From Macrostomum lignano (Eukaryota), in assembly GCA_002269645.1 (NCBI GenBank), contig NIVC01000940.1:1-64000 (forward strand): a stretch of 64,000 nt of DNA, in the 5' to 3' direction. A program made the position numbers and the translations under genes. The first letter of the stretch is position 1. Each line of letters begins with the position of its first letter. This document shows, in pieces, positions 15,123 through 64,000 of the stretch. The notes beneath the pieces are model-generated. The model saw nothing but the letters and a program-made list of their open reading frames with translations. It was not told the DNA's origin and did no database searches.

Positions 15123-15179
15123 ATGCTCGATCGTCAATCGAAATCGAAGCTGTATATAGCAGGCATTTGTTTATATGCA

Positions 15180-15450: not shown

Positions 15451-15761
15451 GTATCGAGATCGAAGTTCCCGATTCCGGTCGCTGTGATAGGAAGAATCGA
15501 GAACAAAAAGCTTTGAACTTCCTTCTCTCTGCACTGTTTTATTCAGCACAGACAGACCTTGTGTTTGTCTGTCTATACGAGCTACGGTTTGCAGCTTGTT
15601 TATGCCGGCATTGAGGGCCTGCCAAAATGCCAGTCTGCCAATTTGCGGTGCCAGATGTGCTCTCGTGCAGTTAAAATTGCATCAAGTTTTATCCTAGGTA
15701 GACTTCTGGGGGCACCTCAATTTATGGAATTGCTTCTGGAGTTCTTGTGGTTTTGCTGTTT

Positions 15762-17434: not shown

Positions 17435-17712
<278 letters not shown>

Positions 17713-18334: not shown

Positions 18335-19040
18335 GTCATTGATAATCCGGGGATTAGGAATAAATTCTCAAGTCACTGATAATCCTGGGATTAGGAATAA
18401 ACTCTCAAGGTCACTGATAATCCGGGGATTAGGAATAACCTTTTAAGGTCATTGATAATCCGGGGATCGGGAATCAAGGTCGCTGATAATCCGGGGATTA
18501 GGAATCAAACTTTAAGGTCACTGATAATCCGGAGATTAGAAATCAAGGTCGCTGATAATCCGGGGATTAGGAATAAAGGTCGCTGATAATCCGGGGATTA
18601 GGAATCAAGGTCACTGATAATCCGGGGATCGAGAATCAAGGTCACTGATAATCCGGGGATCGAGAATCAAGGTCACTGATAATCCGGGGATTAGGAATCA
18701 AGGTCACTGATAATCCGGGGATTAGGAATCAAGGTCACTGATAATCCGGGGATTAGGAATCAAGGTCACTGATAATCCGGGGATCGGGAATCAAGGTCAC
18801 TGATAATCCGGGGATCGGGAATCAAGGTCACTGATAATCCGGGGATTAGTAATCAAGGTCACTGATAATCCAGGGATTAGTAATCAAGGTCGCTGATAAT
18901 CCGGGGATTAGGAATCAAGGTCACTGATAATCCGGGGATTAGTAATCAAGGTCACTGATAATCCGGGGATTAGTAATCAAGGTCACTGATAATCCGGGGA
19001 TTAGGAGTCAAGGTCACTGATAATCCGGGGATCGGGAGTC
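18335..19040. repeat. 31-bp minisatellite just downstream of the Frizzled stop codon
   Basis: About 22 copies of AAGGTCACTGATAATCCGGGGATTAGGAATC. Confidence 0.95.
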
Positions 19041-28887: not shown

Positions 28888-37287
<8,400 letters not shown>

Positions 37288-40804: not shown

Positions 40805-43800
40805 ATGGAGGAAAAGAGTGCAACTGCTAATAATGACTCTGACACTTCTACTTCGACTTGCTCTAGTCAATTAGAAACGCAAAGTAAGAAGCTTCAGTCT
40901 TCTTATCTTGATTCAACATGTAATGATTTAGAAGTGTCACAGAATCACTTTGATTCAGCCAAACCTTCATCCTTTTTTATTAGATTTCATGGTGCAATTA
41001 GTATGTTCTATTCAAAAAACAAAGAACTAGTTGTTGTTTTATGTTTGAGTGCACTTTGGTTTTTATCTAATATTACTATATTAAGGTAAGAACTTATTTC
41101 TTTTTTGTTTTTAAGCTATAAGCCCATTTTTATAATTAATCTTATAATCTTAATTTGAAATATAATTGAATTATAATGCTTATCTAATTATCATTATTGT
41201 TATATCTAATGAGGACTAATAATCAGGTGCATGATTAAAACTGCCACACAGCAATACTGGAGACTGCCACAACTATTACTGGCTCCTAGTATTAAGGAGG
41301 AGCTACTAATCTTCTAGCATTGGTTCCTCTCTTGCAGGCTTGTCCTGCTAGCTTTCCTACTCATCTTCTCTCTAGCACCATTCAATAATACATTGAGCCA
41401 AATTCTTCCCCTAGCTCCTTAAGTATGATGGTCTTGGTGTGTAGCAGTCTTGGTCCTACACCAATAATCAATATATAAACTAAGAAATCATGTAAGGAAT
41501 AGTTTTATTTTTATCTAAGCTAAAGATAAGACTAGCCTAGTAAAATTTTGAAAGCTATTAACTTATTTTTAAATATTTATATTTTATTTGACTAGTCACT
41601 AACTAAATTTGCATTGCAATAAGTAAAAAAAACATCTGATCTTACATTTGTTTTGATGTCTAGTCTTTAGTTTTTAAGATTAAAATATATAAGAAAACCA
41701 TAAAAGAACTTTTTTACTATTTTTTGTTATATAATATATTGGCAATTTCCTAGATTCATATGTTTAATTATTTTCTATTTGAAATGGTACATTTACATGG
41801 TGCAGTCATGCTAAAGTGATATGGCATATAGTCTATGGTCCTCGTAGTCTATAGTCTATAGAATAAAGGTCTAAAGGTGATAAGAATGAAAGCAATAGTG
41901 AAGGGAAGGGATTAGCTGCAAATATCAAAGCTGCAAATATTGAAACTCAAAACATGGCCAATAGACCTCTAGCACCTACAATAATTGTGTTGCCTGCAAT
42001 TTTGGGACTTAGGTGCAACACTACTACAGTATTTAATACCCCTTAATACCATTTAAGAAACAAACTATTGATATTATAAACTTTTATTGACGTTTAACTA
42101 CTAGTTCTTAACTTGTTCTGTTGCCCATTTGTTTTTGCATTACATAAATGCGCAAATTCAAATGGAAAATAATTAAACGTGCAAATCTAGGAAATTGCCA
42201 ATAAATTATATATATACATTAACTCTTTTTTCCTCTTTTAGTAGACATAATTTGGTATACTAAAAATTTTTTCCTCACTAGGGGCAATAAATTTAACCTA
42301 TTAAATAGATATTAATATGATAGTCATAAATTTGTCTAAAGTTTAAGCATATTTAAAAATAAAAATTGTTAAAAGTTGAAAAATTTTCTTATATTATATT
42401 GGCTATACATTCTATGTGATTCTAATGAACTTTTATAATAGAACTTTTTATTTTTTTCAATTTAAAAAATGCAAATGCATAGGTCTATTCTTAGTAAATG
42501 TCATAGTTTTTAAAAAAAACCATTTCTATTAAAAAATGACATTCTATTATATTTCAATAAAAGCCAAATAAATAATTTTTTAATGAGAGTTTTTTCTTTT
42601 TAACAAAGTATTTTTCTCTTCTAGTTCATGTTTGCTTTTTATTCTATATAAGCCTAATTGCATTAAAAAGTTTTTATTTGTAAAAAACCTATTTTTTTTA
42701 TTAAAATTTGCCTTTTATACCCCATTAGAGCGAATAGGGGTTTTTGCGGACAACGTCCGGCGCGCTTGTGAAAAATTGCCTGCGCGGCTGCGCAGAAAGA
42801 AATTTCTGTCCGCGCACAAGGTGCATGGCGCGTGCGCAGCGCGCGCCATGCACCTTGTGCGCGTAATGTTACTAGCATATATGTAGATCTGCACGCAGCG
42901 CGCACCATGCACCTTGTGCGCGTAATGTTACTAGCATATATGTAGATCTGCACGCAGCGCGCACCATGCACCTTGTGCGCGTAATGTTACTAGCATATAT
43001 GTAGATCTGCACGCAGCGCGCACCATGCACCTTGTGCGCGTAATGTTACTAGCATATATGTAGATCTGCACGCAGCGCGCACCATGCACCTTGTGCGCGT
43101 AATGTTACTAGCATATATGTAGATCTGCACGCAGCGCGCACCATGCACCTTGTGCGCGTAATGTTACTAGCATATATGTAGATCTGCACGCAGCGCGCAC
43201 CATGCACCTTGTGCGCGTAATGTTACTAGCATATATGTAGATCTGCACGCAGCGCGCACCATGCACCTTGTGCGCGTAATGTTACTAGCATATATGTAGA
43301 TCTGCACGCAGCGCGCACCATGCACCTTGTGCGCGTAATGTTACTAGCATATATGTAGATCTGCATGCAGCACCATCTATTGTGCGCGTAATGTTACTAG
43401 CATATATGTAGATCTGCAGTAGCGCGCACCATGCACCTTGTGCGCGTTGTTACTAGCATATATGTAGATCTGCACGCAAATGCACCTTGTGCGCGTAATG
43501 TTACTAGCATATATGTATCTGCACGCAGCGCGCACCATGCACCTTGTGCGCGTAATGTTACTAGCATATATGTAGATCTGCACGCAGCGCGCACCATGCA
43601 CCTTGTGCGCGTAATGTTACTAGCATATATGTAGATCTGCACGCAGCGCGCACCATGCACCTTGTGCGCGTAATGTTACTAGCATATATGTAGATCTGCA
43701 CGCAGCGCGCACCATGCACCTTGTGCGCGTAATGTTACTAGCATATATGTAGATCTGCACGCAGCGCGCACCATGCACCTTGTGCGCGTAATGTTACTAG

Positions 43801-46800
43801 CATATATGTAGATCTGCACGCAGCGCGCACCATGCACCTTGTGCGCGTAATGTTACTAGCATATATGTAGATCTGCACGCAGCGCGCACCATGCACCTTG
43901 TGCGCGTAATGTTACTAGCATATATGTAGATCTGCACGCAGCGCGCACCATGCACCTTGTGCGCGTAATGTTACTAGCATATATGTAGATCTGCACGCAG
44001 CGCGCACCATGCACCTTGTGCGCGTAATGTTACTAGCATATATGTAGATCTGCACGCAGCGCGCACCATGCACCTTGTGCGCGTAATGTTACTAGCATAT
44101 ATGTAGATCTGCACGCAGCGCGCACCATGCACCTTGCGCACATAACGTAGCGTATGTAGATTTGGTATAACAAACAGTTGTGCACCCTTGTGCCTTTCAG
44201 GCTTTCACTAGTGTCTTGTATGCTTTATAAATTTACATATGTACATGTACATGCAGGTGCAATGCTACATGAGTGAATGCCAGTGCCTGATCTGCACCCA
44301 CACCTTGTTCACCTATATACATTTATGTCATGTACTATATAATACATTTATACGTACATGTAGGTGCGATGCTACATGTAAAGCAGTTAGGCATGTACCC
44401 GTGCCTTGCACCCGCACCTTGTGCGCTTATAAGTTCAGTATACATTTATGTATTAAAGTACAATGCTACTAGCAGTGCTCACCCATGCTTGCTTAATTGC
44501 ACCTGCGCCTTGTGCGCTTACTCAAGTACATTTAACATGTATGAGCCAGCAGCCAATTCTACCCTTAATGGACTTTGCAGATTTGGTATTGTATATTTAG
44601 ATGATTTAGTATATTAAGATAAGATTTAGTATATTGTGAAAGATAGTTGGATTGGTAGCTACCTAATTTTTTGTGTCTAGCAATTTAATGCAATGATATA
44701 ATAGCTAATTGGGACGAGAAGCGGAGCAAAGACATAGAAGCAAAGAGAGAGTGGCTACTGACTGCAAGTGTATATATAGAGATTACAACACCCCTAATCC
44801 AAAACCTAGACAAACCCCCACGTAATGTGCAATGTACAAATAATCGATAAAATATATCATGCAAGAATATCATACGTCAGAATATGTACAAATATGGAAC
44901 TGCTTTACAAGAAATAATATAACGATATGAATGAAATACAAATAATACAGATTGTCATGTTTGAATAGTTTATTTCAAAACAATATGCAATTCTAGCGGT
45001 GCATGCCTATGTTCGATGCACAATGTAACGTAAACATGTGTACAACGTAATTTACTCGTGTTAGATTTTCTTAGAAAAATTCAAATTTTGTAGGCTTAAT
45101 TTAGTCGTCACTGACATCCGTAAATCTAGCGCTCCTATCCAACGAATGATAGCATCCCTGAACTGGCTGCACCGCAAAATTCAACGCGGAAAAATTCTTG
45201 TGAAGGCATACCAAGTTGCCGAACGAATCCACGACAGGCGCGCTAGAAAGACAAAATCTTTCAGCAAAACACGTTTTGTCTCGTCCAGTTTCACCATGGT
45301 GCAGGCTACTGTAACGGAGCTCCGAATTTGGCTGACGACACTAAACGAGACGCCTCTGTCTCGCAAAAACCGCGAAGTTTTAGCGTACCTGCAGTCCACG
45401 GCTTTTGTTACTGAGTTGCTGATCTTCAGCGAAGTGATGAAACCGTTCTGCGCAACTATGCTACGCTGCCAGAATCTACAGCTGCCTGTCTGGAGCATGG
45501 TCGAGGATATCTCGAGGCTGTCTGTGGAGCTGGAGCAAAAAAAAACTGCTTTATCCCAATTACACGAGCTCGCGAACATGGATAGAGAGCTCGATTCATT
45601 TGCGTCAGCTACTGCAGCAAATCATGATCTCCGGCAGCATCTGCCACTGCTGTTTACCAACTTAACTGACCTACAGCAGGGTGTCTACCACGACGTTGAT
45701 TTGGCCACTACCACCACTGTTCCTCGGTGTATTTTAGATCGTAGGTGCCGGCACGTCAGTGACAGTGAGGACTCGAGCAGCGACTCAGAGTCAGATTCTG
45801 AATTGGAGGTTAGGCACGCTGGTCGCAACGTCAGATCAACTTTTAAATCGGCCTTGTCAGCAGGCGTTGAGTTGGTGACAGCCTTAGGTGACCGTCTCAG
45901 TGTACGAACGTCCCACTCCATCCCGAGTTTTATTAACCTTCTGTCGTCGGCGTTTGGCCTTGCTGGTTATGTTGGAGCCATGTGCGGTCGTCTTCGTCGT
46001 GGTTCTTCCGGCGCCACAGTGTTTTTGCGGCATGAAGCGCACTTCGTGGTCTATGGTCGAAATGCTTTCAGCATGGCCGCTGAAGCCGCTCGTTCACGAC
46101 GCAGTCTGCGCGACCTATTCGATTCAGCCGACTTGCAACCAGTTGATCTGCACACCCTCTGGTGCGACACGCTGAAACAGATTGTCTGGAGTGAAGATAG
46201 CACCTCGGCCCACTGTCGGCGAGTGCTTTTCGGTGACACTGTGCCAGACGACCGAGTGCTGACGCTGGCGTTAACCGAAGTGTCAGATGAATTTGCGATT
46301 GATTTCGGACAAGGACCTGTTAAACTGAAAGTACAGGAACAGGCGTTTATTAAAGCTATGTACAACGACGACCAACTGTACACACGATTTGGCAAGCCAC
46401 TTTGTGCGCTCTTAGATTGGGCCCTTGCCAAGGGCTGCCCTGAGGCCATCGTGGAGAGCTTGTACACTTCGATGGAGCGGCAGTGCATGCAAGGCGCACT
46501 TCAACTGTCTAGTACGCTAGAGTTGCGCACCCGCTTGGCGTGGCATTTACCGCGTACTCTTGCTGCCATACCCACGAATGTACTTGAACGGATTAGTCGC
46601 GAGTGGCTGACGTCGCACCCGGTTACGTTTTTGTCTGCTGGATCAAATAAGCGGAAGCAGGAGGTGCTAGAGCGACTGAAATCTGAAGAAGGTCGTGTTC
46701 GGCTGAAGTAGATTTTATTATACATGATGTATAACATGTTACTGTCACATCATTTAGCTAGCAACGATTTTTTATCTGCCCTCGTTTTCTGTTGTTGTCC

Positions 46801-49800: not shown

Positions 49801-52800
49801 GCCACACTCTCAGATCCTCAGTTGCTGGGCCAGCCTCCCAGATCCTCAGTTGCTGGGCCACCCTCCCAGATCCTCAGTTGCTGGGCCACCCTCCCAGATC
49901 CTCAGTTGCTGGGCCACCCTCCCAGATCCTCAGTTGCTGGGCCACCCAGATCCTCAGTTGCTGGGCCACCCTCCCAGATCCTCAGTTGCTGGGCCACCCT
50001 CCCAGATCCTCAGTTGCTGGGGCACTCTCAGCCCCTCAAGGCCATCATTGAAGACAGGTCTTCAACCCCGACCTCCCCCAGGCGAGTGCTGGCAGCGGTT
50101 CCGCACCGTCCGCTTCCCAGCCTTCGTGCTGCTGCTGCCGGGCCTCAGCGAAGTCGCTTACTCTGGACCACTCGACCTGACGCACCTGCAGCGCTTCCTG
50201 ACGGAGGCTCCGCTGGGCTACCGGACTGTCCGTTCCGATGCCGAGCTGTTGAAGTTCACGCAGCTGTACGATGTGAGTGCCGGGTGTACTTTTTGCGAGA
50301 ATGCGCCTGGTATGGGGTGAGATTTCCGCTGCCGTGTCTGGAGATGGAGGAGAGATTTCCGTCTGTCGTGTCTGAGGATGGAGGTGAGATTTCCGTCTGT
50401 CGTGTCTGGGATGGGGTGAGATTTCCGTCTGTCGTGTCTGGGGATGGAGGTGAGATTTCCGTCTGTCGTGTCTGGGATGGGGTGAGATTTCCGTCTGTCG
50501 TGTCTGGGATGGGGTGAGATTTCCGTCTGTCGTGTCTGGGGATGGGGTGAGATTTCCGTCTGTCGTGTCTGGGATGGGGTGAGATTTTCGTCTGTCGTGT
50601 CTGGGGATGAAGGTGAGATTTCCGTCTGTCGTGTCTGGGGATGGGGTGAGATTTCCGTCTGTCGTGTCTGGGATGGGGTGAGATTTCCGTCTGTCGTGTC
50701 TGGAGATGGATGTGAGATTTCCGTCTACCATGTCTGAAATGGGGTGAGATTTCCGTCTGTCGTGTCTGGGGATGGAGGTGAGATTTCCGTCTGCCATGTC
50801 TGGGATGGGGTGAGATTTCCGTCTGCCATGTCTGGGATGGGGTGAGATTTCCGTCTGTCGTGTCTGGAGATGGATGTGAGATTTCCGTCTGCCATGTCTG
50901 GGATGGGGTGAGATTTCCGGCTGTCGTGTCTGGAGATGGATGTGAGATTTCCGTCTGCCATGTCTGGGATGGGGTGAGATTTCCGTCTGCCGTGTCTGGG
51001 ATGGGGTGAGATTTCCGTCTGCAGTGTTTGGAGTTTTTGGGTACTCTATTAGAACAGATTTGTAGTGGGTAAAAGTGCAAGATCTGTGTACTTTAGATTA
51101 TTCCCTAAAATCTCCCCTTTTTCCCAGCCTATAGACTGTGGCCTGTGGGCCAGGTAAATTTCACATATTATCGAATATGTGAATTGCTATTTGTGATCAA
51201 GCTTGTGTCACCATTTTTTAATTAATGCTACTGTAAGTAATGATGTCCTTTCTCTTCAGTTTGTTTTTCTTGACATCGCTAATGCGCTCTCTGAAATGTT
51301 GAATCTTACTGTGTGCCTGTCTTCTCTGTCCATTGTGTCTTCTTTTCGTTGTCTAGATCTTCCAATTTCGTATCGTATTATTGAGTCCTCGGTGTGCAAG
51401 TGCTCACTCTGGCGAATCCCCACAGAATGTGCTCATCGGCTGCTACAACCTGTCTGCGGGGCCCGCGATCCCCGGACTGCACCAGTTCTATGCCGCCTCG
51501 GTGCACGCCTTCGACATGTTCGCCTCGGTGCCGTTCCTGCTGCCCGAGTTCGACACCTCTGACAAGTTCCAGTGCGGCCACAATGGCCAGATCATTCTGT
51601 TGCGCAGCGAGGACGTGGCTCTGGTAGGTTGGTGTGCGTCTGGTAGCTTAGTTTGAAGTCTGGTAGCTTAGTTTGAAGTCTGGTAGCTTAGTTTGAAGTC
51701 TGGTAGCTTAGTTTGAAGTCTGGTAGCTTAGTTTGAAGTCTGGTAGCTTAGTTTGAAGTCTGGTAGCTTAGTTTGAAGTCTGGTAGCTTAGTCTGGTAGC
51801 TTAGTCTGAAGTCTGGTAGCTTAGTTTGAAGTCTGGTAGGTTGGTTTGAAGTCTGGTAGGTTGGTTTGAAGTCTGGTAGGTTGGTTTGAAGTCTGGTAGG
51901 TTGGTTTGAAGTCTGATAGATTAGTGTGGGTCTGGTGGCTTAGTTTGAAGATTGGTAGGTTAGCTTGCAGTCTAGTAGGTTGCTGTGGGTCTGGTAGCTT
52001 AGTTTGAAGTCTAGTAGGTTACTTGTGTGTTTATAAAGTAGGTTGGATGTGCATAAAATTGTGGGTCTGTCAGGCAGGAAGCGAAACGAAGTAGTGACTT
52101 GTTTGTATGCTGCCAATTCAGCAAATGTATTTTGGTGGTTAAGTCAAGATGATTCAGCAAAGCACAGTGCGCCTGAGCACGCCTCATCATGCTCTTTGCA
52201 TTATCCATTCGGTTCGTTTTTCGGCATCGTCCGCTTCTCGCCCTCTCCTTCCCCAGACACCGGACATCGCCCGTCCCCTGAGCTGCTCGGAGCTGCTCGG
52301 CTGGCTGCGGCAGCACCGGCGGCCGTCGCGGCTCTCCGTGCTGCAGTCCCCTGGCAGCAAGTCGCGCCGCCTCGCCGACCAGCTGCTGCTGCCCGCCAGG
52401 CCCGCAGCGGTGGCGCGGCCCGTCCTGCTGCTGTTCGAGCCCGGACCGCGGCACTGGGACTCTCCCGGCCTCAGCTGGCTGCGCTTCGTTGACGCGGTGT
52501 ACGCGCGAGGCTGCAACGCCAGCGGTGGAGGCTCCGACGCTGAGGCCGACGGTGCCGCCGAAGCTGACGACAGCGCGGAGTCCGCAGACGGCTTCGACAC
52601 GGCCATTGCCGCCGCCTTGGCGCGGGTGGCGCACGACCGGCGGCTGGCGGCTGAGGCGGCCTCTCTTCGCCGGGTTTGCTCGGACCTCGCCGTCTCCAAG
52701 GAGCTCGCCGGCGGTTGCTATGCGCCAGTTGCGACGGCCTGGCAGCGGCTTTTCGGCCAGCGGCCATCGGCCTCGGAGGCCATGATGCTCAGCGGCCGCC

Positions 52801-53999
52801 TGCACCGGCTCTGCCTGCTGGCCAGCCTCTCCGCCTCATCGCCGCACCCGCCCGACCGTCTGTCTGGCTTCTCCGCAGCAGCCGCATCGCCTCAGCTGAT
52901 CGCCGCCGCCCGCAGCCTTCACCGCCTTGCCTGCGCTGCCGGCGGCAACCGGACACTCGGCCTGGCGCTGGCCAGCTCCCGTCTGCACCCGCAGCTTCTC
53001 CGCGGCCTCCTCGGCCCCGCCGCCAGCACGGCTGTCCGCCACGCCGTCATTGTTGACCTGGCCGACGGCGGCGGCTCCGCCACCCGACTGCCCGGCCCGG
53101 CCAGCCTGCAGGCCATCTTGGAGCTCCTCACGCGCCACCACGCCGGCGAGCTCCGCCCGTTCCGCCGGCCGCCAATGCAGCCGTTGATGTCGCCGTCCCG
53201 GACCGCCCTGCCGGCGACCCTCACCGCTGCCAATCTGCCCGGCTTCGCGCTGAACCGCAGCCGCGACGCTTTGGTGCTGTTCCATTCCCCCGCCTGTGTC
53301 TACTGCGCCCCGCTAGTTGCCATGACAACCAGACTGTCGCTGCTGTTCGGCAGCCGGCTGCCCGTCGGCTTTGTCGACGTGTCCGCCAACGATCTGGACG
53401 CCACCTGGCGGCCGTCCCGGCTGCCGGCCCTTTTACTGTTCCCCGGGGATGCCGGGTCCGACCCGGTGCCCTACACCGGTCCGGCCACCGCTGCCGGCCT
53501 GCTGGACTTCCTCGCGCGCCACTCAGCCGCCTCGATCGGGCCGCGCGCCTGGGTCGGCCTGGCGCCCTGCCGCGGCAGCTGTCCGGCCTGGCAGGCCGAG
53601 AGGCTGGCCGACCACGCCGTCCGGCTGCAGGCCCGGCTGGACGGGGCGCTCGAGCTCGCGCAGTTCGCCGGCGACCGACTGGCCGAGGCCCACTGGCAAC
53701 TCGGCCGCCTCATCGTTGGCAACTGGAGGCGGCTGGCCGGCGCCAGTGACTTGCTGGAGCCGGCCAGCGATGCCGGTGATGCAGTGTCGCTGCGACTTCG
53801 GGCTCGCGCTTTCGGCCACGTGCTGGCCCGCTGCGCCAGGCTGGTGGACGCCTGCGCCAGGAAGCGGGACCGCAGCCTGCAGCTGCTGGCCCGGCTGCGG
53901 CGCCTGCTGGCCGACAATGCGGCTGCCGATGCGTCCGGCGAGGTCGAGGTCGACTGGCTGCAGCTGGCTGGTGGAGCCGCCGACCAATGGGCCGACTGA
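40805..53999 (+). CDS. TXNDC11: Thioredoxin domain-containing protein 11-like (type II ER membrane protein), 5 exons: 40805-41085, 49289-49536, 50082-50272, 51426-51623, 52257-53999 (886 aa)
   Basis: A TM segment followed by R|SKEV (TXNDC11 has SRAKDV here). Trx-like domain 1: LMLYAPWDAES...AVACW...EC...FP...Y.GP. Then LIGCYNL..PAIPGLHQFY. Trx domain 2: LVLFHSPACVYC...VDVSANDL...LPALLLFP. C-terminal helical region. Phases are consistent (2,1,0,0). Exon 1 is less certain than exons 2-5. Confidence 0.82.
41727..42210. mobile_element. ~480-bp MITE/foldback with 60-85 bp imperfect TIRs in TXNDC11 intron 1
   Basis: TATTGGCAATTTCCTAGATT (41737-41756) is a perfect inverted repeat of 42184-42203, and pairing extends imperfectly inwards and outwards. 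The TA-rich ends leave the TSD and superfamily undetermined. Confidence 0.75.
42818..44140. repeat. 59-bp minisatellite in the left subterminal region of the hAT-like element
   Basis: About 22 copies of GCGCGTAATGTTACTAGCATATATGTAGATCTGCACGCAGCGCGCACCATGCACCTTGT. Confidence 0.96.
45094..46711 (+). CDS. hAT-like transposase, intact 3' exon (~538 codons); N-terminal exon(s) not found
   Basis: After the acceptor TTTTGTAG (45086-45093): LNLVVTD (the motif following hAT CxxH), KTRFVSS (TRW-like), S.AFVTELLIFSEVM, and C-terminal CPEAIVESLYTSM at the expected catalytic-Glu position. No stops in the frame. Confidence 0.7.
46865..47158. repeat. 61-bp minisatellite in the right part of the hAT-like element
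   Basis: About 5 copies of GTTAAGGCCACTTAGGAGCCTGTGGCTGCACGCCACTGCTAGTTGAGCTGTATTGTATCCA. Confidence 0.95.
48346..48443. repeat. 18-bp minisatellite
   Basis: About 5 copies of GCAGGTGCAAGGTGAGCA. Confidence 0.9.
49655..50025. repeat. 28-bp minisatellite in TXNDC11 intron 2
   Basis: CCCAGATCCTCAGTTGCTGGGCCACCCT variants. Confidence 0.94.
50312..51022. repeat. ~32-bp minisatellite in TXNDC11 intron 3
   Basis: GAGATTTCCGTCTGTCGTGTCTGGGATGGGGT variants. Confidence 0.94.
51639..52020. repeat. 20-bp minisatellite in TXNDC11 intron 4
   Basis: TCTGGTAGCTTAGTTTGAAG variants. Confidence 0.94.
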
Positions 54000-55307: not shown

Positions 55308-56100
55308 ACTCCCTGCATCTCACCTGCAGTCTCCTACAGCCACTCCCTGCATCTCACCTGCAGTCTCCTACAGCCACTCCCTGCATCTCACCTGCAGTCT
55401 CCTACAGCCACTCCCTGCATCTCACCCGCAGTCTCCTACAGCCATTATCTACATCTCACCTGCACTCCTACAGCCACTCCCTGCATCTCACCTGCAGTCT
55501 CCTACAGCTATTACCTACATCTCACCTGCAGTCTCCTACAGCCATTACCTACATCTCACCCGCAGTCTCCTACAGCCATTATCTACATCTCACCTGCACT
55601 CCTACAGCCACTCCCTGCATCTCACCTGCAGTCTCCTACAGCTATTACCTACATCTCACCTGCAGTCTCCTACAGCCATTACCTACATCTCACCTGCAGT
55701 CTCCTACAGCCACTCCCTGCATCTCACCTGCAGTCTCCTACAGCTATTACCTACATCTCACCTGCAGTCTCCTACAGCTATTACCTACATCTCACCTGCA
55801 GTCTCCTACAGCCATTACCTACATCTCACCCGCAGTCTCCTACAGCCATTATCTACATCTCACCTGCACTCCTACAGCCACTCCCTGCATCTCACCTGCA
55901 GTCTCCTACAGGTATTACCTACATCTCACCTGCAGTCTCCTACAGCCATTACCTACATCTCACCCGCAGTCTCCTACAGCCATTATCTACATCTCACCTG
56001 CAGTCTCCTACAGCCACTCCCTGCATCTCACCTGCAGGCTGCAGCCTCCATCCACTCACTTGCAGCCTCCAGCCATTCCCTGCATCTCACCTGCAGTCTC
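55308..56100. repeat. ~34-bp minisatellite upstream of SNRPC
   Basis: CACCTGCAGTCTCCTACAGCCACTCCCTGCATCT variants. Confidence 0.94.
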
Positions 56101-56208: not shown

Positions 56209-56766
56209 ATGCCGAAGTTTTACTGCGACTACTGCGACACCTTCCTGACGCACGACTCGCGTTCGGTGCGCAAGACGCACTGCAGCGGCCGGCACCACCG
56301 GGATGCAGTTCGCATGTACTACCAGAAATGGCTGGAGGAGCAGGTGCAGAAGCTGGTTGACAACACAACCGCCGCGTTCAAGTCCGGCGCTGCCAGGCCT
56401 GGCCGCGGCCCGCCCATGTCCATGCCGCCGCCGCCGCCTACCTCTGCCGGATTCCACCAGGCTCCGCCGTCGCTGCCGCCGCCGCCGATGCCTCCGGGTG
56501 CGCGCGGCGGCCCGCCAGCCGGGGCGATGATCCCCCCGCCGGTGAGCCTCGGCCACCACCAGCAGCCGCCGCATCACCATCCGTACGGCGCCGGCCCGCC
56601 GCCCGGCTTCCGCGGTGGCCCGCCGCCGCCTCCGTCTGGCGTGGCCGGTGGCGGCCTCGGCGGCATTGGGGGACACCGGATGCCGCCCATGCTGGGGCCG
56701 CCCAGGGGCTTCCCGCCCAGGCACGGCCCGATGGGCGGCGGCCTGCCGCCTCACGGCATGCGCTGA
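56209..56766 (+). CDS. SNRPC: U1 snRNP protein C, single coding exon (185 aa)
   Basis: [58 protein letters not shown] (matrin-type zinc finger) plus a Pro/Gly-rich tail. Confidence 0.97.
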
Positions 56767-57156: not shown

Positions 57157-57858
57157 CTGACTGTTGAGATATGCATTGGCCTAGGGATGAGATCTATAGC
57201 ATTCTGACTGTTAAGATATGCATTGGCCTAGGGGTGAGATCTATAGCATTCTGACTGTTAAGATATGCATTGGCCTAGGGGTGAGATCTATAGCATTCTG
57301 GGTAATGAGATAATGCATAGGCCTAGGTGGTGAGATCTATAGCATTCTGGCTAATAAGATAATGCATAGCCCTAGGGGGGTGAGATCTATAGCATTCTAG
57401 CTAATGAGATAATGCATAGGCCTAGGGGGTGAGATCTATAGCATTCTAGCTAATGAGATAATGCATAGGCCTAGGGGGGTGAGATCTATAGCATTCTAGC
57501 TAATGAAATAATGCATAGGCCTAGGGGGTGAGATCTATAGCATTCTAGCTAATGAGATATGCATAGGCCTAGGTGGTGAGATCTATAGCATTCTAGCTAA
57601 TGAGATAATGCATAGGTCTAGGGGTGAGATCTATAGCATTCTAGCTAATGAGATAATGCATAGGCCTAGGGGGTGAGATCTATAGCATTCTAGCTAATGA
57701 GATAATGCATAGGCCTAGGGGTGAGATCTATAGCATTCTAGCTAATGAGATAATGCATAGGCCTAGGGGTGAGATCTATAGCATTCTAGCTAATGAGATA
57801 ATGCATAGGCCTAGGTGGTGAGATCTATAGCATTCTGGCTAATGAGATAATGCATAGG
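57157..57858. repeat. ~48-bp minisatellite upstream of RPL22
   Basis: About 14 copies of GAGATCTATAGCATTCTAGCTAATGAGATAATGCATAGGCCTAGGGGT. Confidence 0.95.
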
Positions 57859-57933
57859 TGTAGGGGATTTAGGCGTTCTGTGGTGCAATCAAGCCTTGGC
57901 AACCCTCATCCCCGCCATCTGGTGCATGCCGCA

Positions 57934-58320
57934 ATGCCGAAGGTGCCACGCCGGTCCAACCTGAAGGGCAAGAAGAAGAAGCAGACCAGCAAGTTCGTGC
58001 TGGACTGCACGCACCCCGTTGAGGACGGCATCATGGACGTGGCAAGCTTTGAGAAGTTCCTCACCGAGCGCATCAAGGTGCAGGGCAAGACCAACAACCT
58101 GCAGAACCTGGTGAACGTTGAGCGCAACAAGAGCAAGGTGACGGTCACAGCCGACATCCCGTTCTCCAAGCGGTACCTCAAGTACCTGACCAAGAAGTAC
58201 CTGAAGAAGAACTCGCTGCGCGACTGGCTGCGGGTGGTCGCCTCCAACCGGGAGACCTTCGAGCTGCGCTACTTCAACATCAACAGCGAGGAGGCGGACG
58301 AGGACGCTGGCGAGGACTGA
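57934..58320 (+). CDS. RPL22: 60S ribosomal protein L22 (eL22), single coding exon (128 aa)
   Basis: [37 protein letters not shown]...[28 protein letters not shown]...ELRYFNI. The start at 57934 (MPKV) is preferred over the ORF-track ATG, which lies in the repeat. Confidence 0.96.
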
Positions 58321-58699: not shown

Positions 58700-59065
58700 G
58701 CTTGGACCATTTGGCCATTGGGACACTGTCAGCTGCAGCATGTGCTTTGACCATTTGGACCATTGGGACACTGTCAGCTGCAGCATGTGCTTTGACCATT
58801 TGGACCATTGGGACACTGTCAGCTGCAGCATGTGCTTTGACCATTTGGACCATTGGGACACTGTCAGCTGCAGCATGTGCTTTGACCATTTGGACCATTG
58901 GGACACTGTCAGCTGCAGCATGTGCTTTGACCATTTGGACCATTGGGACACTGTCAGCTGCAGCATGTGCTTTGACCATTTGGACCATTGGGACACTGTC
59001 AGCTGCAGCATGTGCTTTGACCACTTGGATTATTGGGACACTGTCAGCTGCAGCATGTGCTTTGA
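58700..59065. repeat. 45-bp minisatellite
   Basis: About 8 copies of GACCATTGGGACACTGTCAGCTGCAGCATGTGCTTTGACCATTTG. Confidence 0.96.
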
Positions 59066-60666
59066 TCGAAGGACAGGATGCATCATGTACATCAACTATT
59101 GAATAGCATTGAACTGGGCGATAGTGCAAGCAATTTACAGCTCAGAGCCCGGCAAGTGAAGGCAACGTCATCTGCCTTCAGTTTGTAAAAAACTCCCCTC
59201 AAAAACAAAAACATGCAGGATGCAGTTCCAATTAATGCTGAGGTGCGCAGGGGAAGGGAGCTTCTGTCACCCCCTGGCAGTTTAGATATTTTTTATTTCC
59301 CATCCCTGATAGCTGTTGGCATCGCTTGCCTGCACGGGTTTGCCAGTTTATTGCCCACAGACCCGCAGAGGCAATTCAATTTGCTCAGAGTTAATTAGCA
59401 AGCCTGTTACTAATCGATGCAGTCACTCAATTGTCAGAACGGGGCGGTCGAAAGGCATGCATTAAGCAATCTTCCACAGAATTCTCAGGTCCCTCATACC
59501 CAAATTAGCATTTTCCCAGGCTCAGTAGTTTATCAGTTTTATTGTCCAGCTCAAACTTGGAAAAATTCAGCTATCCATTTAGCGAATTGGCTTAAGTTTA
59601 AATCGGCTGCTTTATGGGCAGCTACCTGCTTCGTATCATTTTTGTGGATTGAGCTGTCACTGATGCCATCAACTGATCATCGTCAATTTGCTGCGTTTTT
59701 TGCGTGAAATGCAGGAGACGATGATGATGCGAGAGAAGAGGATTGCGGGGTCGCACAAGGCAAAGCGCCCTGCTAAGCGAATACCAGAGAGACGCTGCGC
59801 TGCAGGTGGAGAGGAAGAGTCTGGATAAGGACGAGAGGACCAACTGTTTACTGATATCTACGAGCGTATTAAGGAAGCGGTTTTGGTTCAATTCTTTTGA
59901 AAAGCTACATTCATCATCTTAGGCACCAGGGACTCGCAACTCCGCCCCTGCACGCCTTGATAAAACAAAAGGTTTAAGTTTCATACAAAGTTTCCTAACT
60001 CGCCTCCAACATCTGTTCGGTTTTTTATGAGAGGAAAGAATCCCCCTATTTATTAGTAGTAACAGTAATTATGCAAAAATTTGGAAAATTCAAGTTGATA
60101 CAAAATGCCTGAGATTCTGCACTCACCCATATCATTTCTATATATCTTTCCCATCACTAACTTGTCATGCACTCGTGCACGCGCTATAAATTAGAGTACC
60201 AGCTGAGGCACTCTGGCTGCAGTTGTGCCATTGTTGTGCCATTGTGCCATTGTAATGCACCTTGCATGCTCACCCCCTGCAGCTTGAGCAGTTCAGCTGC
60301 AATTATAAAAAGAATTAACTGCACAACAGTTTTGCCGTGTTCACCCGAATGAATGTTGAAATGTTTTTCGGATGGAAACTTTGTGGCTCGCTTTTTATTA
60401 CTCTGTTACTCTGTTCTTTTACTCTCTGTCTGCTAGCAGGCCACGACACAGCCAAGTGATAGGCTTCTCTGAGTGAGCTGGCCAATGAGGGACAGCCGGG
60501 GGGTCATTATTCATAGCTAAGGACTGACTGACCCCAGCAGGAGCGATATAAGCCGGTGACCAAGCTTTCCTGCCATTTTTAATGCAAGCAAGCAACTGCA
60601 TTCGCGTCGCAAAACTAAATTGACTAACTAGCTTCATTGGTTAACTTCTCAGCCGAGTTCTCAGCC

Positions 60667-63600
60667 ATGGGCAGCAGCTCTGGCGCACCGGAAGGACTCA
60701 GCTCGCCCGTGAAGCGGTTCTGCGGCTACACCACCGCCCACGGGCTGGGCCGCTTCTCCGAGCAGTCCAACCTCATCGGCAGGGTGATCTGGGTCTCCTT
60801 CCTGCTCGCCACCTACAGCGGCTTTGCCTACCACCTGTCCACCCTGTTCGAGAGGTTTCTGCAGGCTCCGGTGCTCACTAAAATGACCGTGTCCACTCTA
60901 CAGTTCGAGTTCCCGGATGTGTACATCTGCCCAACTAACGCCGTTACCATGAGCAGGATTTTTAAAAAGCTGCCCCAAAACGAGGTCACCTTTGGCGAGT
61001 TCTTCTTAAAGAAAAGCGTCGAGGAAAAAATCGGAATTTACTCGTTTGATCTCTCCAGCGGACGGTACGATTTGGAGCTGAACGACATGACGAAGGCTTT
61101 GCTGAGCGTTCTGCACAGCATGGAGGAGATCATAATGTCTTACTTTCAGTTTTTCGATATCGGTGAGTCCTCCTGACTGCTGTGAAGACAGCGCGCACTG
61201 TGCAGTCTGGACGAGTTGCTCTTCAAACCATTGCCCTGAACCCAATCCTAAAACGCAATTTCATTTCTTCAGCCGACGCAGCCAAGTGTCGAAGAACGCC
61301 CTCTGGAGAAGAGTACTCCGGGAATGTGAGCTCAGCAGTTGTCTACGGATTCACCACTATGACTGTGACGTCCATCAACACTTCGGCGTTCACGCCCAGT
61401 CCGTACAGAGGCGTCAAGCAGTGCATGAGGTGGAACGATGCAGCTCAAAAACTGCTGAGCCTCGGCGAAAGTGGCCTGGCTAACAGACTGCTGGCGCTGA
61501 ACTTTTCAGACAGCGAGTCCCGGTGCCGCTCGCCGCCTGGGCTGCCTCTGTCTGAGTTCTTTCCTATCGCTAGCCGTGAGTTTCCATCTGTTTGTCCGAT
61601 TTGTTTGTCTCGATCAGGTCACACGGATGGAGATTTCCGGTCCTGCCAACACCACAGGCTCGGTGTTTCGGCACGCCGGCTGCCTTCCCCTTGCGCTGAC
61701 CAACTCGAGTTCGTTCAACTTCACCTGCTACCGGGGCGGCTTGAGCTCGCTCGAAACCTGCGCTGAATGCTGCGGCAGGCGCAGCTTCCAGTACATGGCG
61801 ATCAGCCGCCAGGACTGCTTCTGCGGGAGCAGCATTGGCGGCTACGAGAACAGCAGCAGCGTGTGCAACGCCTCCTGCCTCCACGACAATTCGGCAATCT
61901 GTGGATCGGAAACTGCCGTCACTGTTCTGCAGATTCGGGACAACGGTAGGTGGGATAGTCGGAGAGCGGGTTAGAGATTGGTTGCTACTCAAAAGTAGCT
62001 CAATAAAACCGATAAGTTGACGACCTGGGACAGATTTTTTATGGTCACTTGTATATTGCTGGCAAAATCAGGTCATTCTGCAGACTCGTAACTCGCAGCT
62101 CAAGGCACGCATTCCACTTTGTAGGCAGCAGGCCGTTGCACGTCGCAAACTTCAGCGACCTGGACGCAATCTCCAGCGGGCCCTACTGCTTTTTCGCGGA
62201 TGAGCTGAGCGACAAGCTGAACGCTGCATTCTGCGAAATTCCCTACTGCCGTGAGTTTCCAACATGTTGCCTGACTTTTCCTTTCAAAGACGACTTCGAT
62301 TCGTGAATGAAATACTTGACGTTCCATCGCTCAATCCAGAAATTTCGAGAACCTACGACTGCATCGTGAGCTCCGAGGACAAGCTGACTCAGCAGCAAAG
62401 GCTGTCGCGCTACACCGGACGTCGGAACGTCACCAGCACTGGCCGGCGGTGCATGCCCTGGAGTCAGCTGTCCACAATTGAGCAAGTTCTCAAGGCGCGC
62501 CGCGGTAAGAGCTTCGATTGCATTGCTCACCTGTGCCGCTGGCAAATTTAATTTCGCCTGATCGAACCAGTCAAATTCCAATTTAGGTTCGGAAGTTGGC
62601 TTCATGGACGAAGTGCGGGAAATGCTTATCCAGACTCCGGACAGGCTTGAAGGCGAGAGCGACAATTACTGCCGTCCGGTTAGCGTTGTGGTCGATTCTG
62701 TCAACATCCACGGGCCCAAGGACTTCCAGTAAGCTTCGTATTGCATCGCAAGTAGCGTATGTGTGCTTGTTGCAGCGCTCCAAAATCTTTCCTATTATTT
62801 TTAGGCGGTTTAGCGCCATCGATTCGGAGGTTCCTGTGTGCATTCCGGAAGATTTCTGGGCCAACATTCCGTCCATTACGATAAAATTTGGCTACCTGTT
62901 TAACATGATCTTTCAGACCTGTAATGTGCCACTCTGTTGTGAGTTGCGCCAGTGACAATTGAGCTGGATCTGTTTCTCGGTTATTATTTATTATTATATT
63001 CTAGGCATTGTTTTCAGTGCATTCTGTACCGAATGAATTTCTTTAGACACCGAGGTCCCCAGCGTGACAGCCACAATCAGAGACTCCGTCGGTGAGCACC
63101 TGCTGGCCCGACAGTTCGGCAGCGACCTCAACGCCGGCCTCACCGAGTGCAGCTTCGCTGGCCAGAAGTGCACCAAGGACGACTTTTTGAACGTCGCCCA
63201 CCCGCAGCTGGGCATGTGCCACAAGTTTCTCAAGCAGCGCTTCACCGCCAACATGACCAGCACGCAGTTGGCGGAGAGCCAGCTGTCCATCAAGTACTTC
63301 ACGGACTCGACAGACTCCAAGGGTCAGACGGTGTCCAACATCGACAAGCTGACGCGGGTGGTGCGAGACAGCCGCGGCTCCGATGCGACTCAGGTCGCAT
63401 TCAAGGTGAGTCTTCATCGGTCGCTGGGCGTCTCAGTGTCTCACGCAATCTCTGAGCCTGGCTGCTCAACCGCGAACCCGCAGGCGGTCATCGTCCCGGA
63501 TAGCTCGTTCCCGTGGGCCTCGAACGGCGTCAATGTGGCCACCGCTCAGCGCATGGACGTGCATCTTAGATTCGACAAGTACTCCAGACTGTCCACCTCA

Positions 63601-64000
63601 TCGAGGCCTTGCCTTGAGACTACGGAGCCGATCACCTACCGACTGCCGTCATGGAAGCTGTTTACGTCAAATGAGGACTCTGGGTAAAGAAAGCAAAAAG
63701 TTTTATTTCCTTATCTTTAGTCTGCAATATTGTAAATATCAAAGCTGTTTAAAACTAAAAATTTGCTTCCAGCGTCAACTCGGATGCGCAGGAAATTATG
63801 CGATCTTCCAACTGGACGCTGAAGCTGTCTATGTTGCGCAACGCGCTGCTTAAACTGAACGGCTCAAGGTAAGATTTTGCATAAAACCCTCCTTTTTCGC
63901 GCTTCTCTGCTTCTGGGAATTTCAGCATGTCAAATCGAATTTTGCAATAATTTTAATCTCCATGACTTCAGCGCACTGACAGTCTCGGGTAGTCAGTTCA
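60667..64000 (+). CDS. DEG/ENaC (ASIC-superfamily) channel with kringle-WSC-kringle insert, 3'-incomplete; exons 60667-61162, 61273-61575, 61658-61945, 62125-62250, 62340-62504, 62587-62728, 62805-62938, 63047-63405, 63484-63683, 63773-63868, 63972->64000
   Basis: FCGYTTAHGL (pre-TM1 HG motif), TM1, FPDVYICPTN, then the insert, then GSDLNAGLTECSFAGQKC..DDF...HPQLGMCHKF and palm strands ending RLSTSSRPC. Ten short (76-179 bp) GT-AG introns with consistent phases. Confidence 0.85.

What the first reader, a model, noticed from the sequence alone, without database searches (positions are those of the whole stretch)
60667..64000. DEG/ENaC channel carrying kringle-WSC-kringle modules in its finger domain
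Between FPDVYICPTN and the GSDL...CSFAGQKC strand, where degenerins and ENaC have their regulatory insertions, six exons add ~386 aa. Kringle 1: CRRTPSGEEYSGNVS...QCMRW...RCRSP...GPYCF...AFCEIPYC. Kringle 2: YDC...YTGRRNVTSTGRRCMPWS...DNYCRP...VPVC...QTCNVPLC. Each has six Cys in kringle order. The insert starts and ends in intron phase 1, the hallmark of exon-shuffled extracellular modules. Kringles bind proteins and WSC binds glycans, a pairing known from Kremen receptors. I know of no characterised DEG/ENaC with this architecture. It suggests (inference) a channel gated or tethered by a protein, glycan or matrix ligand.
Basis: partly seen in the sequence, partly recalled or inferred. Interest (0 to 1): 0.88.

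Follow-up and report, generated by a model that had tools for sequence, protein, structure and literature searches.

The report
Flatworm sodium channel with extra binding modules
This is a real, transcribed flatworm (Macrostomum lignano) gene for a DEG/ENaC-type ion channel. Its outer "finger" region carries a 386-residue cysteine-rich insert: a sugar-binding-type WSC domain nested inside one degenerate kringle-like module, followed by a second. No paper found describes this architecture, and its function is untested.

Summary
Window 60667-64000 (+) encodes the first 10 exons, plus 29 nt of exon 11, of M. lignano gene BOX15_Mlig006056g1. My GT-AG splice model translates 100% identically to the RNA-seq-derived GenBank protein PAA48513.1 (1049 aa).

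Six exons (61273-62938, 1158 nt = 386 aa, phase 1 in and out) interrupt the Pfam ASC domain at about profile position 155. Deleting them in silico restores one contiguous ASC match.

- **WSC domain:** solid, on Pfam, 2,679 profile hits and a fold match to yeast Wsc1 and Kremen.
- **Kringles:** supported only as divergent, loop-expanded derivatives. They have the right Cys count and order and the right motifs. Profile-vs-PDB E is 2e-4 and hhalign E is 3e-6 to 9e-6. UniProt names one model of this gene "Kringle domain-containing". But they fall below Pfam threshold, and an AF2 model of kringle 2 matched no kringle.
- **Domain order:** it is not kringle-WSC-kringle. The WSC exon sits inside kringle 1, between Cys3 and Cys4.

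The same insert, with 20 of its 22 Cys invariant, is kept in at least 8 paralogue groups (29-43% identity). All are M. lignano; none turned up elsewhere among 1.84 billion representatives. Thumb and TM2 are intact just past the window. Function as a ligand, glycan or matrix "antenna" is inference. New variant of a known kind; moderate interest.

The parts
60667..61162 (+). Exon 1 (aa 1-165): cytoplasmic N-terminus with the HG motif (TTAHGLGR), TM1, post-TM1 strand FPDVYICP, and the first finger helices. Ends in phase 1.
   Evidence: ASC profile 1-154 matches aa 18-157. H25, G26 and F82-C88 are invariant in paralogues.
61273..61575 (+). Exon 2 (aa 166-266), phase 1-1: N-terminal half of kringle-like module 1. 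Cys1 is in C-R-x4-G-x2-Y-x-G-N-x-S, Cys2 in C-M-R-W, Cys3 in S-R-C-R-S-P. The loops are expanded.
61658..61945 (+). Exon 3 (aa 267-362), phase 1-1: a complete WSC domain (10 Cys) encoded by one exon and nested between Cys3 and Cys4 of kringle-like module 1.
   Evidence: Pfam WSC 33.0 bits alone against a cut-off of 27.8. 2,679 profile hits centred on profile positions ~100-200. Foldseek matches Wsc1 7pz2 (TMt 0.67) and Kremen 5fws. Paralogue P0007 also keeps the WSC in its own exon.
62125..62250 (+). Exon 4 (aa 363-404), phase 1-1: C-terminal half of kringle-like module 1 (GPYCF = Cys4; C-E-I-P-Y-C = Cys5 and Cys6).
   Evidence: Pfam Kringle profile 58-79, E 0.04. hhalign against canonical kringles gives prob 88%, E 2.9e-6, with the gap at the WSC site.
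62340..62504 (+). Exon 5 (aa 405-459), phase 1-1: start of kringle-like module 2 (YDC = Cys1; YTGRRNVTSTGRRCMPW = Cys2).
   Evidence: Pfam Kringle profile 7-39, E 0.02-0.06. The same hit appears in 8 of 9 paralogue segments. Profile vs PDB: tPA kringle 2, E 2.3e-4.
62587..62728 (+). Exon 6 (aa 460-506), phase 1-2: middle of kringle-like module 2 (IQTPDR...DNYCRP = Cys3).
   Evidence: NYCR segment aligned collinearly with tPA K2.
62805..62938 (+). Exon 7 (aa 507-551), phase 2-1: end of kringle-like module 2 (VPVC = Cys4; C-N-V-P-L-C = Cys5 and Cys6). The insert ends in phase 1.
63047..63405 (+). Exon 8 (aa 552-671): the ASC domain resumes with the last finger helix (SVGEHLLARQF) and the strands LTECSFAGQKCTKDDF...GMCHKF.
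   Evidence: aligned to FaNaC 196-224; contiguous ASC match once the insert is removed.
63484..63683 (+). Exon 9 (aa 672-738): ASC ectodomain.
63773..63868 (+). Exon 10 (aa 738-770): ASC ectodomain.
63972..64000 (+). First 29 nt of exon 11, cut by the window end. The rest of the gene lies beyond the window: thumb Cys cluster, TM2 GALGLWSGISILTICELLELFIY, and C-terminus.
   Evidence: L001 = NIVC01004126.1, 99.8% identical to the window.

Best explanation
**Shown.** This is an expressed, intact Macrostomum lignano gene for a DEG/ENaC (ASC-family) channel subunit. It belongs to a clade found only in this species in these searches. In that clade a 386-aa, 22-Cys, heavily N-glycosylatable module is spliced into the finger region of the ectodomain.

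The module is built from phase-1 exon units:
- a divergent kringle-derived domain, split by a complete WSC domain inserted in the loop between its Cys3 (CRxP) and Cys4 (GPYC);
- a second divergent kringle-derived domain.

The pore machinery is conserved: HG motif, TM1, and TM2 with a G-I-S filter position.

**Inferred.** The trimer would display three WSC/kringle heads at the periphery or top of the ectodomain. That is the region where other DEG/ENaCs receive their activating or modulating inputs (FMRFamide pocket in FaNaC, acidic pocket in ASIC, GRIP domain in ENaC). The heads most likely act as an extracellular binding module for a glycan, matrix or protein partner. Such a module would either gate or modulate the channel, or anchor it to extracellular material. 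The ligand and the effect on gating are unknown.
For: **Gene model**
- GT-AG model, 100% identical to the transcript-derived PAA48513.1.

**Channel identity**
- ASC 2.2e-19.
- 150 bits and one contiguous match, 18-333 to profile 1-285, once the insert is removed.
- FaNaC 1.3e-14, then ASIC, ENaC and PPK, in the PDB.
- TM2 and thumb are intact in the same locus.

**WSC**
-.

**Kringle-like modules**
- Six invariant Cys each, in kringle order.
- K2 profile vs PDB: the first 19 hits are all kringle proteins, best E 2.3e-4, with three collinear segments.
- Pfam Kringle is the top hit in 8 of 9 K2 segments.
- K1 vs K2 hhalign: E 4.5e-5.
- K1 (WSC removed) vs canonical kringles: prob 88%, E 2.9e-6, with the gap at the WSC site. 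K2: prob 83%, E 9e-6.
- Control: a canonical-kringle HMM run on 164 session proteins reached E<=0.05 on one true kringle protein plus 17 members of this family, and on none of the other proteins, which were brought in by their WSC matches.
- UniProt names A0A1I8IZL3 (same gene, model starting in K2) 'Kringle domain-containing protein'.

**Constraint and age**
- The insert and its exon layout are kept in paralogues at 29-43% identity.

**Extracellular location**
- It lies between TM1 and TM2.
- 10 of the protein's 16 N-X-S/T sequons are in the insert.
Against: - Kringle assignment is below Pfam's gathering score everywhere (12-22 bits vs 34.3).
- The AF2 model of K2 (pLDDT 68, 9-sequence alignment) shows a helix plus a long three-stranded sheet and gave no kringle match.
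- The AF2 model of the whole insert is of low confidence (pLDDT 60).
- The K1 profile alone finds nothing significant in the PDB.
- Canonical lysine-binding residues are missing, so no ligand can be inferred from kringle homology.
- No functional, expression-site or binding data exist. Other M. lignano DEG/ENaCs tested in oocytes were silent (PMC9234716), as were C. elegans EGAS channels (PMC10424705).
Confidence: 0.7

Rival explanations
1. The two Cys-rich modules flanking the WSC are not kringle homologues. They are a lineage-specific disulfide-rich fold that shares a few short motifs with kringles by chance or convergence. The only bona fide shuffled domain is then the WSC.
For: - All Pfam Kringle scores are sub-threshold.
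- K2 is ~140 aa against ~80 for a kringle.
- The AF2 K2 model has no PDB kringle match.
- The K1 profile finds no significant PDB hit.
Against: - Several independent weak signals point to the same family and are collinear.
- Six Cys sit in the right order, with the G-x2-Y-x-G...S, C-x2-W, (N)YCR-x-P, P-x-C and C-x-[IV]-P-x-C motifs.
- A specificity control on unrelated Cys-rich WSC proteins was clean.
- UniProt's own pipeline calls K2 a kringle.
- The AF2 models rest on 5-9 sequences and are not decisive.
Confidence: 0.2
2. The insert is an autoinhibitory plug, analogous to the ENaC GRIP domain. It keeps the channel closed until it is displaced or proteolytically removed.
For: It has the same general location (the finger) as the ENaC GRIP domain (established knowledge of ENaC structure). 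The insert is a self-contained unit with phase-1 borders.
Against: - There is no R-X-K/R-R furin motif anywhere in the protein.
- The one dibasic site in the insert (KARR) is not conserved in paralogues.
- There is no sequence or fold similarity to GRIP; the PDB hits for the insert are Kremen and Wsc1.
Confidence: 0.08
3. The insert is a gene-model artefact: a fusion of a separate secreted kringle/WSC gene nested in an intron. Alternatively, it is a cassette normally skipped in the mature mRNA.
For: Every module is phase 1-1, so skipping would stay in frame. Some WormBase ParaSite/UniProt models of paralogues lack parts of the insert (P0004, P0006, P0009).
Against: - The transcript-derived GenBank model contains all six exons in frame with the channel.
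- There is no start codon or signal peptide, and no stop, within the insert.
- The same fusion is present in at least 8 paralogue groups and at a second locus with the same exon layout.
- No insert-free member of the clade was found.
Confidence: 0.05
4. The insert binds nothing that gates the channel. It serves folding, trimer assembly, heteromer choice or surface targeting within an expanded paralogue family.
For: The many co-existing paralogues with diverged insert surfaces but a conserved scaffold would fit subunit-recognition roles. There is no ligand-site conservation to argue otherwise.
Against: The known biology of WSC is carbohydrate or cell-wall binding, and Kremen's KR-WSC surface binds Dkk (established knowledge; fold match). 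The finger is the usual ligand-input region of the family.
Confidence: 0.2

Closest known systems
FMRFamide-gated Na+ channels (FaNaC) and the wider DEG/ENaC/ASIC superfamily
   Same: - Pfam ASC domain, HG motif, FPxVxxC strand, thumb Cys cluster, and TM2 'GxLGLWxGxSxLTxxEL'.
- The best solved-structure matches are FaNaC 7yvb (1.3e-14) and 8on7, followed by ASIC1, PPK26 and ENaC gamma.
- The finger is the variable, ligand-receiving region in all of them.
   Different: - Very divergent core. Word-indexed searches recover only M. lignano relatives.
- It carries a 386-aa WSC/kringle-like insert that no characterised member has.
- The activating stimulus is unknown.
Kremen1/2 ectodomain (Kringle-WSC-CUB, Dkk/LRP6 co-receptor)
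   Same: It is the only well-known protein pairing a kringle with a WSC. It is also the top Foldseek match of the insert model (5fws E 5.7e-4, 167-214 aligned columns).
   Different: - No CUB domain.
- The WSC is nested inside the kringle rather than following it, and there is a second kringle-like module.
- Global rmsd is ~15 A, and Kremen is not found by sequence.
- Host protein is an ion channel, not a single-pass receptor.
Fungal Wsc1-type cell-wall stress sensors (WSC head group)
   Same: WSC fold (7pz2: TMt 0.64-0.67, 26-27% identity; sequence hit 1.6e-4). In yeast this domain is the extracellular head of a mechanosensor.
   Different: Single-pass sensor with a Ser/Thr-rich 'spring', not a channel. 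There is no evidence here for a mechanical role.
[quoted passage not shown]
   Same: A precedent for a DEG/ENaC subunit that has acquired a shuffled extracellular module (PMC10424705). These channels are also functionally uncharacterised and were silent in oocytes.
   Different: A different module (EGF, not WSC/kringle), a different phylum, and an independent acquisition. The position of the EGF modules was not compared here.
ENaC GRIP domain / C. elegans degenerin extracellular regulatory domains
   Same: Lineage-specific regulatory insertions in the finger region of the ectodomain (established knowledge).
   Different: No sequence or fold similarity, no furin sites, and the insert here is made of recognisable mobile domains.

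Membership tests
DEG/ENaC (Pfam ASC, PF00858) | Significant match to the ASC profile above the gathering score | tested here: met
   70.3 bits for the window-encoded 769 aa (cut-off 23.6). 150.4 bits, contiguous over profile 1-285, when the insert is removed, and 91.8 bits for the C-terminal part up to profile 455.
DEG/ENaC (Pfam ASC, PF00858) | Two transmembrane helices with a large Cys-rich ectodomain between them; pre-TM1 His-Gly motif; post-TM1 FPxVTxC strand | tested here: met
   H25-G26 and F82-P83-D84-V85-Y86-x-C88 are invariant in six paralogues. The TM2 hydrophobic peak is at aa 978-1004. TM1 (aa 38-60) was read from the sequence.
DEG/ENaC (Pfam ASC, PF00858) | TM2 pore motif (G/S-x-S selectivity filter, conserved Glu) intact | tested here: met
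   'DIGGALGLWSGISILTICELLEL' is in P0001 and in the 99.8%-identical locus L001, just beyond the window end.
DEG/ENaC (Pfam ASC, PF00858) | Forms a trimeric amiloride-sensitive Na+-permeable channel | not testable with these tools
   Needs heterologous expression and electrophysiology.
WSC domain (PF01822) | Profile match at or above the gathering score, with the conserved Cys framework | tested here: met
   - 33.0 bits for the exon-3 peptide alone against 27.8. In the full protein it is 27.0, just under.
- PF01822 is precomputed for P0001 and most paralogues.
- 10 Cys, the canonical eight included.
- 2,679 profile hits through this segment.
WSC domain (PF01822) | WSC fold | tested here: met
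   Foldseek: Wsc1 7pz2 prob 1.0, TMt 0.64-0.67, rmsd 3.6-4.1 A over 95-97 columns; Kremen 5fws-5fwv. The model's pLDDT over most of the WSC segment (insert residues ~100-195) is ~60-78, dipping to 41-53 at residues 161-180.
Kringle domain (PF00051) | Profile match at or above the gathering score (34.3 bits) | tested here: not met
   11.7-21.7 bits, E 2.6e-4 to 0.25, and partial coverage only: K1 matches profile 58-79, K2 matches profile 4-41.
Kringle domain (PF00051) | Six Cys in conserved order with the flanking motifs (G-x2-Y-R-G...S-G-x2-C-Q-x-W; N-Y-C-R-N-P; P-W-C-Y/F; C-x-I-P-x-C) | tested here: met
   - Both modules have exactly six Cys, which are invariant in the paralogues that carry the complete module, and degenerate versions of each motif.
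- Collinear profile alignment to tPA K2.
- hhalign to canonical kringles: prob 83-88%.
- All loops are 10-45 residues longer than canonical.
Kringle domain (PF00051) | Triple-loop fold with 1-6, 2-4, 3-5 disulfides | tested here: inconclusive
   The AF2 K2 model (pLDDT 68, 9 sequences) gave no kringle match in the PDB. The whole-insert model has pLDDT 60.
Kringle domain (PF00051) | Lysine-binding site (Asp55/Asp57 anionic centre, aromatic trough). This is a feature of ligand-binding kringles, not of all kringles. | tested here: not met
   Read from the sequence: K1 has CRSPPGLPL and K2 has CRPVSVVVD where canonical kringles have CRNPDxD. In K1 this loop hosts the WSC insertion.
Kremen family | Kringle-WSC-CUB ectodomain on a single-pass receptor | tested here: not met
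   No CUB hit, a different domain order, and a channel as host protein. The similarity is limited to the KR and WSC folds.

The most novel reading that the evidence does not exclude
The WSC-in-kringle head is a built-in extracellular tether or ligand sensor. It binds a glycan or matrix component (or a secreted flatworm protein) and transmits binding or mechanical pull through the finger to the gate. That would make this clade a self-tethered mechano- or matrix-gated DEG/ENaC, and a natural example of a whole domain (WSC) inserted into a kringle loop.
Probability: 0.2. Interest if true: 0.8.

Novelty: new variant of a known kind. Interest (0 to 1): 0.55.

Why it matters
DEG/ENaC channels are gated by very different inputs (protons, peptides, proteases, force), and the variable finger domain is where most of these inputs act. 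How mechanosensory members are coupled to extracellular matrix is a long-standing open question.

Here a clade has fused recognisable matrix/glycan/protein-binding modules directly into the finger. That offers a tractable natural experiment: the insert has clean phase-1 borders, so it can be deleted or swapped. M. lignano is also transgenic-capable (PMC5730564).

The locus is also an instructive case of exon shuffling. A complete WSC domain, encoded by a single phase-1-1 exon, lies between the two exons that encode one kringle-like module, giving a nested domain.

If the insert proves to be only a structural decoration, the finding reduces to a lineage-specific curiosity.

Tried and rejected
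1. An acceptor at 61618 for the WSC exon was rejected. It runs into a stop in the required phase; 61658 is correct and matches the GenBank protein.
2. Pfam on the whole protein and on the isolated modules gave Kringle hits below threshold only.
3. A K1 profile searched against PDB sequences gave nothing significant.
4. AF2 of the whole insert (pLDDT 60) confirmed only the WSC and Kremen likeness.
5. AF2 of K2 alone (pLDDT 68) found no kringle and no significant PDB match at all.
6. The same architecture was sought outside M. lignano three ways:
   - an HMM of the insert against 1.84 billion representatives;
   - two word-indexed searches;
   - a local HMM check showing that none of the other listed WSC hits contains the channel.

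   Only M. lignano proteins have the full insert. Hits below rank 150 were not inspected, so a WSC-only or kringle-only DEG/ENaC elsewhere is not excluded.
7. Literature searches found no description of the architecture: ENaC + degenerin + kringle, ENaC + 'WSC domain', Mlig006056, and Macrostomum + ENaC or kringle. The M. lignano DEG/ENaCs tested by Dandamudi et al. are listed there under other gene IDs (Mlig049925, Mlig051885, Mlig041003). Their sequences were not compared with this clade.
8. The furin/GRIP-like activation idea was rejected: no R-X-K/R-R motif is present.
9. The pseudogene idea was rejected: the ORF is intact through TM2 and only 3 nt differ between two assemblies across 2309 nt of CDS.
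Full report
**Origin and gene model**

The window is Macrostomum lignano (free-living flatworm) genomic DNA. Reading 59000-64000 and translating in three frames let me build a GT-AG splice model on the + strand:

| Exon | Coordinates |
|---|---|
| 1 | 60667-61162 |
| 2 | 61273-61575 |
| 3 | 61658-61945 |
| 4 | 62125-62250 |
| 5 | 62340-62504 |
| 6 | 62587-62728 |
| 7 | 62805-62938 |
| 8 | 63047-63405 |
| 9 | 63484-63683 |
| 10 | 63773-63868 |
| 11 | starts at 63972, cut by the window end |

The 769-aa product is 100% identical over its full length to P0001 (PAA48513.1, BOX15_Mlig006056g1, 1049 aa). GenBank models of assembly Mlig_3_7 are a genome-guided transcriptome assembly built with StringTie/TACO from RNA-seq and de novo transcripts (PMC5730564). 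The agreement is therefore transcript-level support that the insert exons and the channel exons belong to one mRNA.

The same locus in that assembly (L001, 99.8% identical) continues with intact exons. These encode the thumb Cys cluster and TM2, 'DIGGALGLWSGISILTICELLELFIY'.

**The channel**

- Pfam ASC matches at 2.2e-19, as profile 1-154 against aa 18-157, plus a downstream stretch.
- Removing aa 166-552 in silico turns this into one contiguous match, 18-333 against profile 1-285, at 150 bits. The C-terminal part reaches profile position 455.
- The insert therefore interrupts the ectodomain at about profile position 155. That is after the post-TM1 strand FPDVYICP and the first helices, and about 20-35 residues before the 'LTECSFAGQKC...GMCHKF' strands. 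By the ASIC topology (established knowledge) this is the finger.
- The closest solved relatives are FaNaC (7yvb, 1.3e-14; 8on7), then ASIC1, PPK26 and ENaC gamma.
- The HG motif and the FPDVY-C strand are invariant in paralogues.

**The insert**

Six exons total 1158 nt = 386 aa, entering and leaving in phase 1. Exons 2, 3, 4 and 5 are each phase 1-1. The insert has 22 Cys (6 + 10 + 6). It holds 10 of the protein's 16 N-X-S/T sequons, and there is no furin motif anywhere in the protein.

*WSC domain (exon 3, aa 267-362).*
- It scores 33.0 bits against Pfam WSC (cut-off 27.8) when scanned alone.
- It drives 2,679 hits in an HMM search of 1.84 billion representative proteins.
- It superposes on yeast Wsc1 (7pz2, TMt 0.64-0.67) and on the Kremen ectodomain (5fws, E 5.7e-4) in a Foldseek search of the AF2 model.

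The WSC assignment is secure.

*The kringle question.* Evidence for:
- Each flanking module has exactly six Cys. They are invariant across the paralogues that carry the complete module, and sit in kringle order with degenerate kringle motifs.
  - K1: C-R-x4-G-x2-Y-x-G-N-x-S; C-M-R-W; S-R-C-R-x-P; G-P-Y-C-F; C-x-[IV]-P-x-C.
  - K2: Y-D-C; Y-T-G-x2-N-x-T-x-S-G-x2-C-x2-W; D-N-[FY]-C-R; P-x-C; C-x-I-x2-C.
- A profile of K2 from six paralogues finds tPA kringle 2 at E 2.3e-4 among 177,635 PDB sequences. The next 18 hits are all kringle proteins (prothrombin, HGF, ROR1). The alignment is in three collinear segments.
- Pfam Kringle is the top hit in 8 of 9 K2 segments, at E 2.6e-4 to 0.09.
- K1 (WSC removed) aligns to K2 by hhalign at E 4.5e-5.
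- K1 aligns to four canonical kringles at prob 88%, E 2.9e-6, from Cys2 to Cys6. The gap falls exactly where the WSC sits, between CRxP and GPYC. K2 gives prob 83%, E 9e-6.
  - Most of these are unrelated Cys-rich WSC proteins.
  - It reached E<=0.05 on one genuine kringle protein (P0043) and 17 members of this family, and on nothing else.
  - In most family members it hits the same two places, the K1 C-half and the K2 N-half.
- UniProt's pipeline names a model of this very gene that starts in K2 (A0A1I8IZL3) 'Kringle domain-containing protein'.

Evidence against:
- Every Pfam score is far below the gathering score.
- K1 alone finds nothing significant in the PDB.
- Both modules are ~140 aa rather than ~80.
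- An AF2 model of K2 (pLDDT 68, only nine sequences) shows a helix plus a long three-stranded sheet and matches no kringle.
- The canonical lysine-binding Asp pair is absent.

I conclude these are kringle-derived modules with greatly expanded loops (about 0.75-0.8 likely). They are not canonical kringles.

*Correction to the stated architecture.* The WSC is not between two kringles. Exon 2 carries Cys1-3 of K1, exon 3 is the WSC, and exon 4 carries Cys4-6 of K1. The WSC is therefore a domain nested in the Cys3-Cys4 loop of K1, and its single phase-1-1 exon lies between the two exons that encode K1. The most divergent full-length paralogue (P0007, 32% identity, locus L002) also has K1-N, the WSC and the start of K1-C as separate tblastn blocks. 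The layout therefore predates the paralogue radiation.

**Distribution**

The full insert is found in at least 8 paralogue groups:
- P0001/P0158/P0159
- P0003/P0005
- P0004/P0006/P0009/P0038
- P0007
- P0008
- P0011
- P0013
- P0051
- P0162-P0164

All are from M. lignano. No insert-free member of the clade was seen. No protein from another species carries the whole insert among the listed hits of the search of 1.84 billion representatives. Lower-ranked partial matches were not inspected.

**Literature**
- No paper holds ENaC together with 'WSC domain'.
- The only paper holding ENaC, degenerin and kringle is a review of ENaC activation by proteases.
- The gene ID Mlig006056 appears nowhere.
- Dandamudi et al. 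tested three M. lignano DEG/ENaCs listed under other gene IDs and found no peptide responses (PMC9234716).
[quoted passage not shown] They gave no currents in oocytes (PMC10424705).
- A membrane-bound six-kringle protein has been proposed as an adhesive anchor in another flatworm (PMC9229212). This is context only.

**Mechanism**

Shown: an intact pore-forming subunit with a conserved, glycosylatable, disulfide-rich WSC/kringle-like head in the finger.

Inferred: the head is an extracellular binding module for a glycan, matrix or protein partner. It would modulate or gate the channel, or anchor it. The finger is where FaNaC, ASIC and ENaC receive their inputs. WSC domains bind carbohydrate or cell-wall material, and the KR-WSC pair in Kremen forms a ligand surface (established knowledge).

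A GRIP-like proteolytic switch is unlikely, since there are no furin sites. A gene-fusion artefact is very unlikely, given the transcript-derived model and the many paralogues. A purely structural or assembly role cannot be excluded.

**Verdict**

This is a new variant of a known kind, a DEG/ENaC clade found only in M. lignano in these searches, with an architecture I found described in no paper. It exists in databases only under machine-given names. Interest is moderate (0.55). It is a clean, testable natural fusion that bears on how finger domains couple extracellular cues to gating, but there is no functional evidence yet.

Noticed in passing
window 19525-21186 (-): An uninterrupted 553-aa ORF encoding a Frizzled receptor (Fz cysteine-rich domain 4.3e-22, Frizzled 7TM region 1.9e-77). 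It is apparently intronless over this span.
   Followed up: partly
window 31905-33203 (+): A 432-aa ORF encoding a polycystin-2-like cation channel (PKD_channel 7e-81, Polycystin_dom 2e-55). This is a second sensory-type channel gene about 28 kb upstream of the DEG/ENaC gene.
   Followed up: partly
window 56209-56766 (+) and 57850-58320 (+): Two small housekeeping genes lie immediately upstream of the channel gene: a U1-type zinc-finger protein and ribosomal protein L22e. The same order is seen in NIVC01004126.1.
   Followed up: partly
whole window, e.g. 10626-11583, 30506-31792, 42835-44136, 50307-51033, 55312-56100, 57165-57866: The window is packed with long minisatellite arrays (periods 13-178 bp, up to 63 copies; 39 TRF rows with score >=200). 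These explain the strong local GC-skew and composition swings. This fits the report that simple and tandem repeats make up 15% of this genome (PMC5730564).
   Followed up: partly
window 58700-59065 vs L001 2499-2909: The 45-bp minisatellite upstream of the gene appears to differ in length between the window and the Mlig_3_7 contig. The alignment offset shifts from 56194 to 56157 across it, suggesting a copy-number polymorphism or an assembly difference.
   Followed up: no
window 45146-46711 (+) and 52149-53999 (+): Two long ORFs (521 and 616 aa) have no Pfam match. The second lies in a 70% GC stretch. They may be repeat-derived or novel.
   Followed up: no
L002 (NIVC01000440.1) 3001-18409: Paralogue Mlig007204 has the same exon layout but spans 15.4 kb. 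It has a ~6.7-kb intron inside kringle-like module 2 and an extra intron in the N-terminal exon.
   Followed up: partly
P0043 (629 aa): Among the WSC-repeat proteins hit by the insert profile, one carries a genuine canonical kringle at its C-terminus (E 2e-23 to a canonical-kringle HMM). So kringle-plus-WSC proteins other than Kremen exist. Its organism was not looked up.
   Followed up: no
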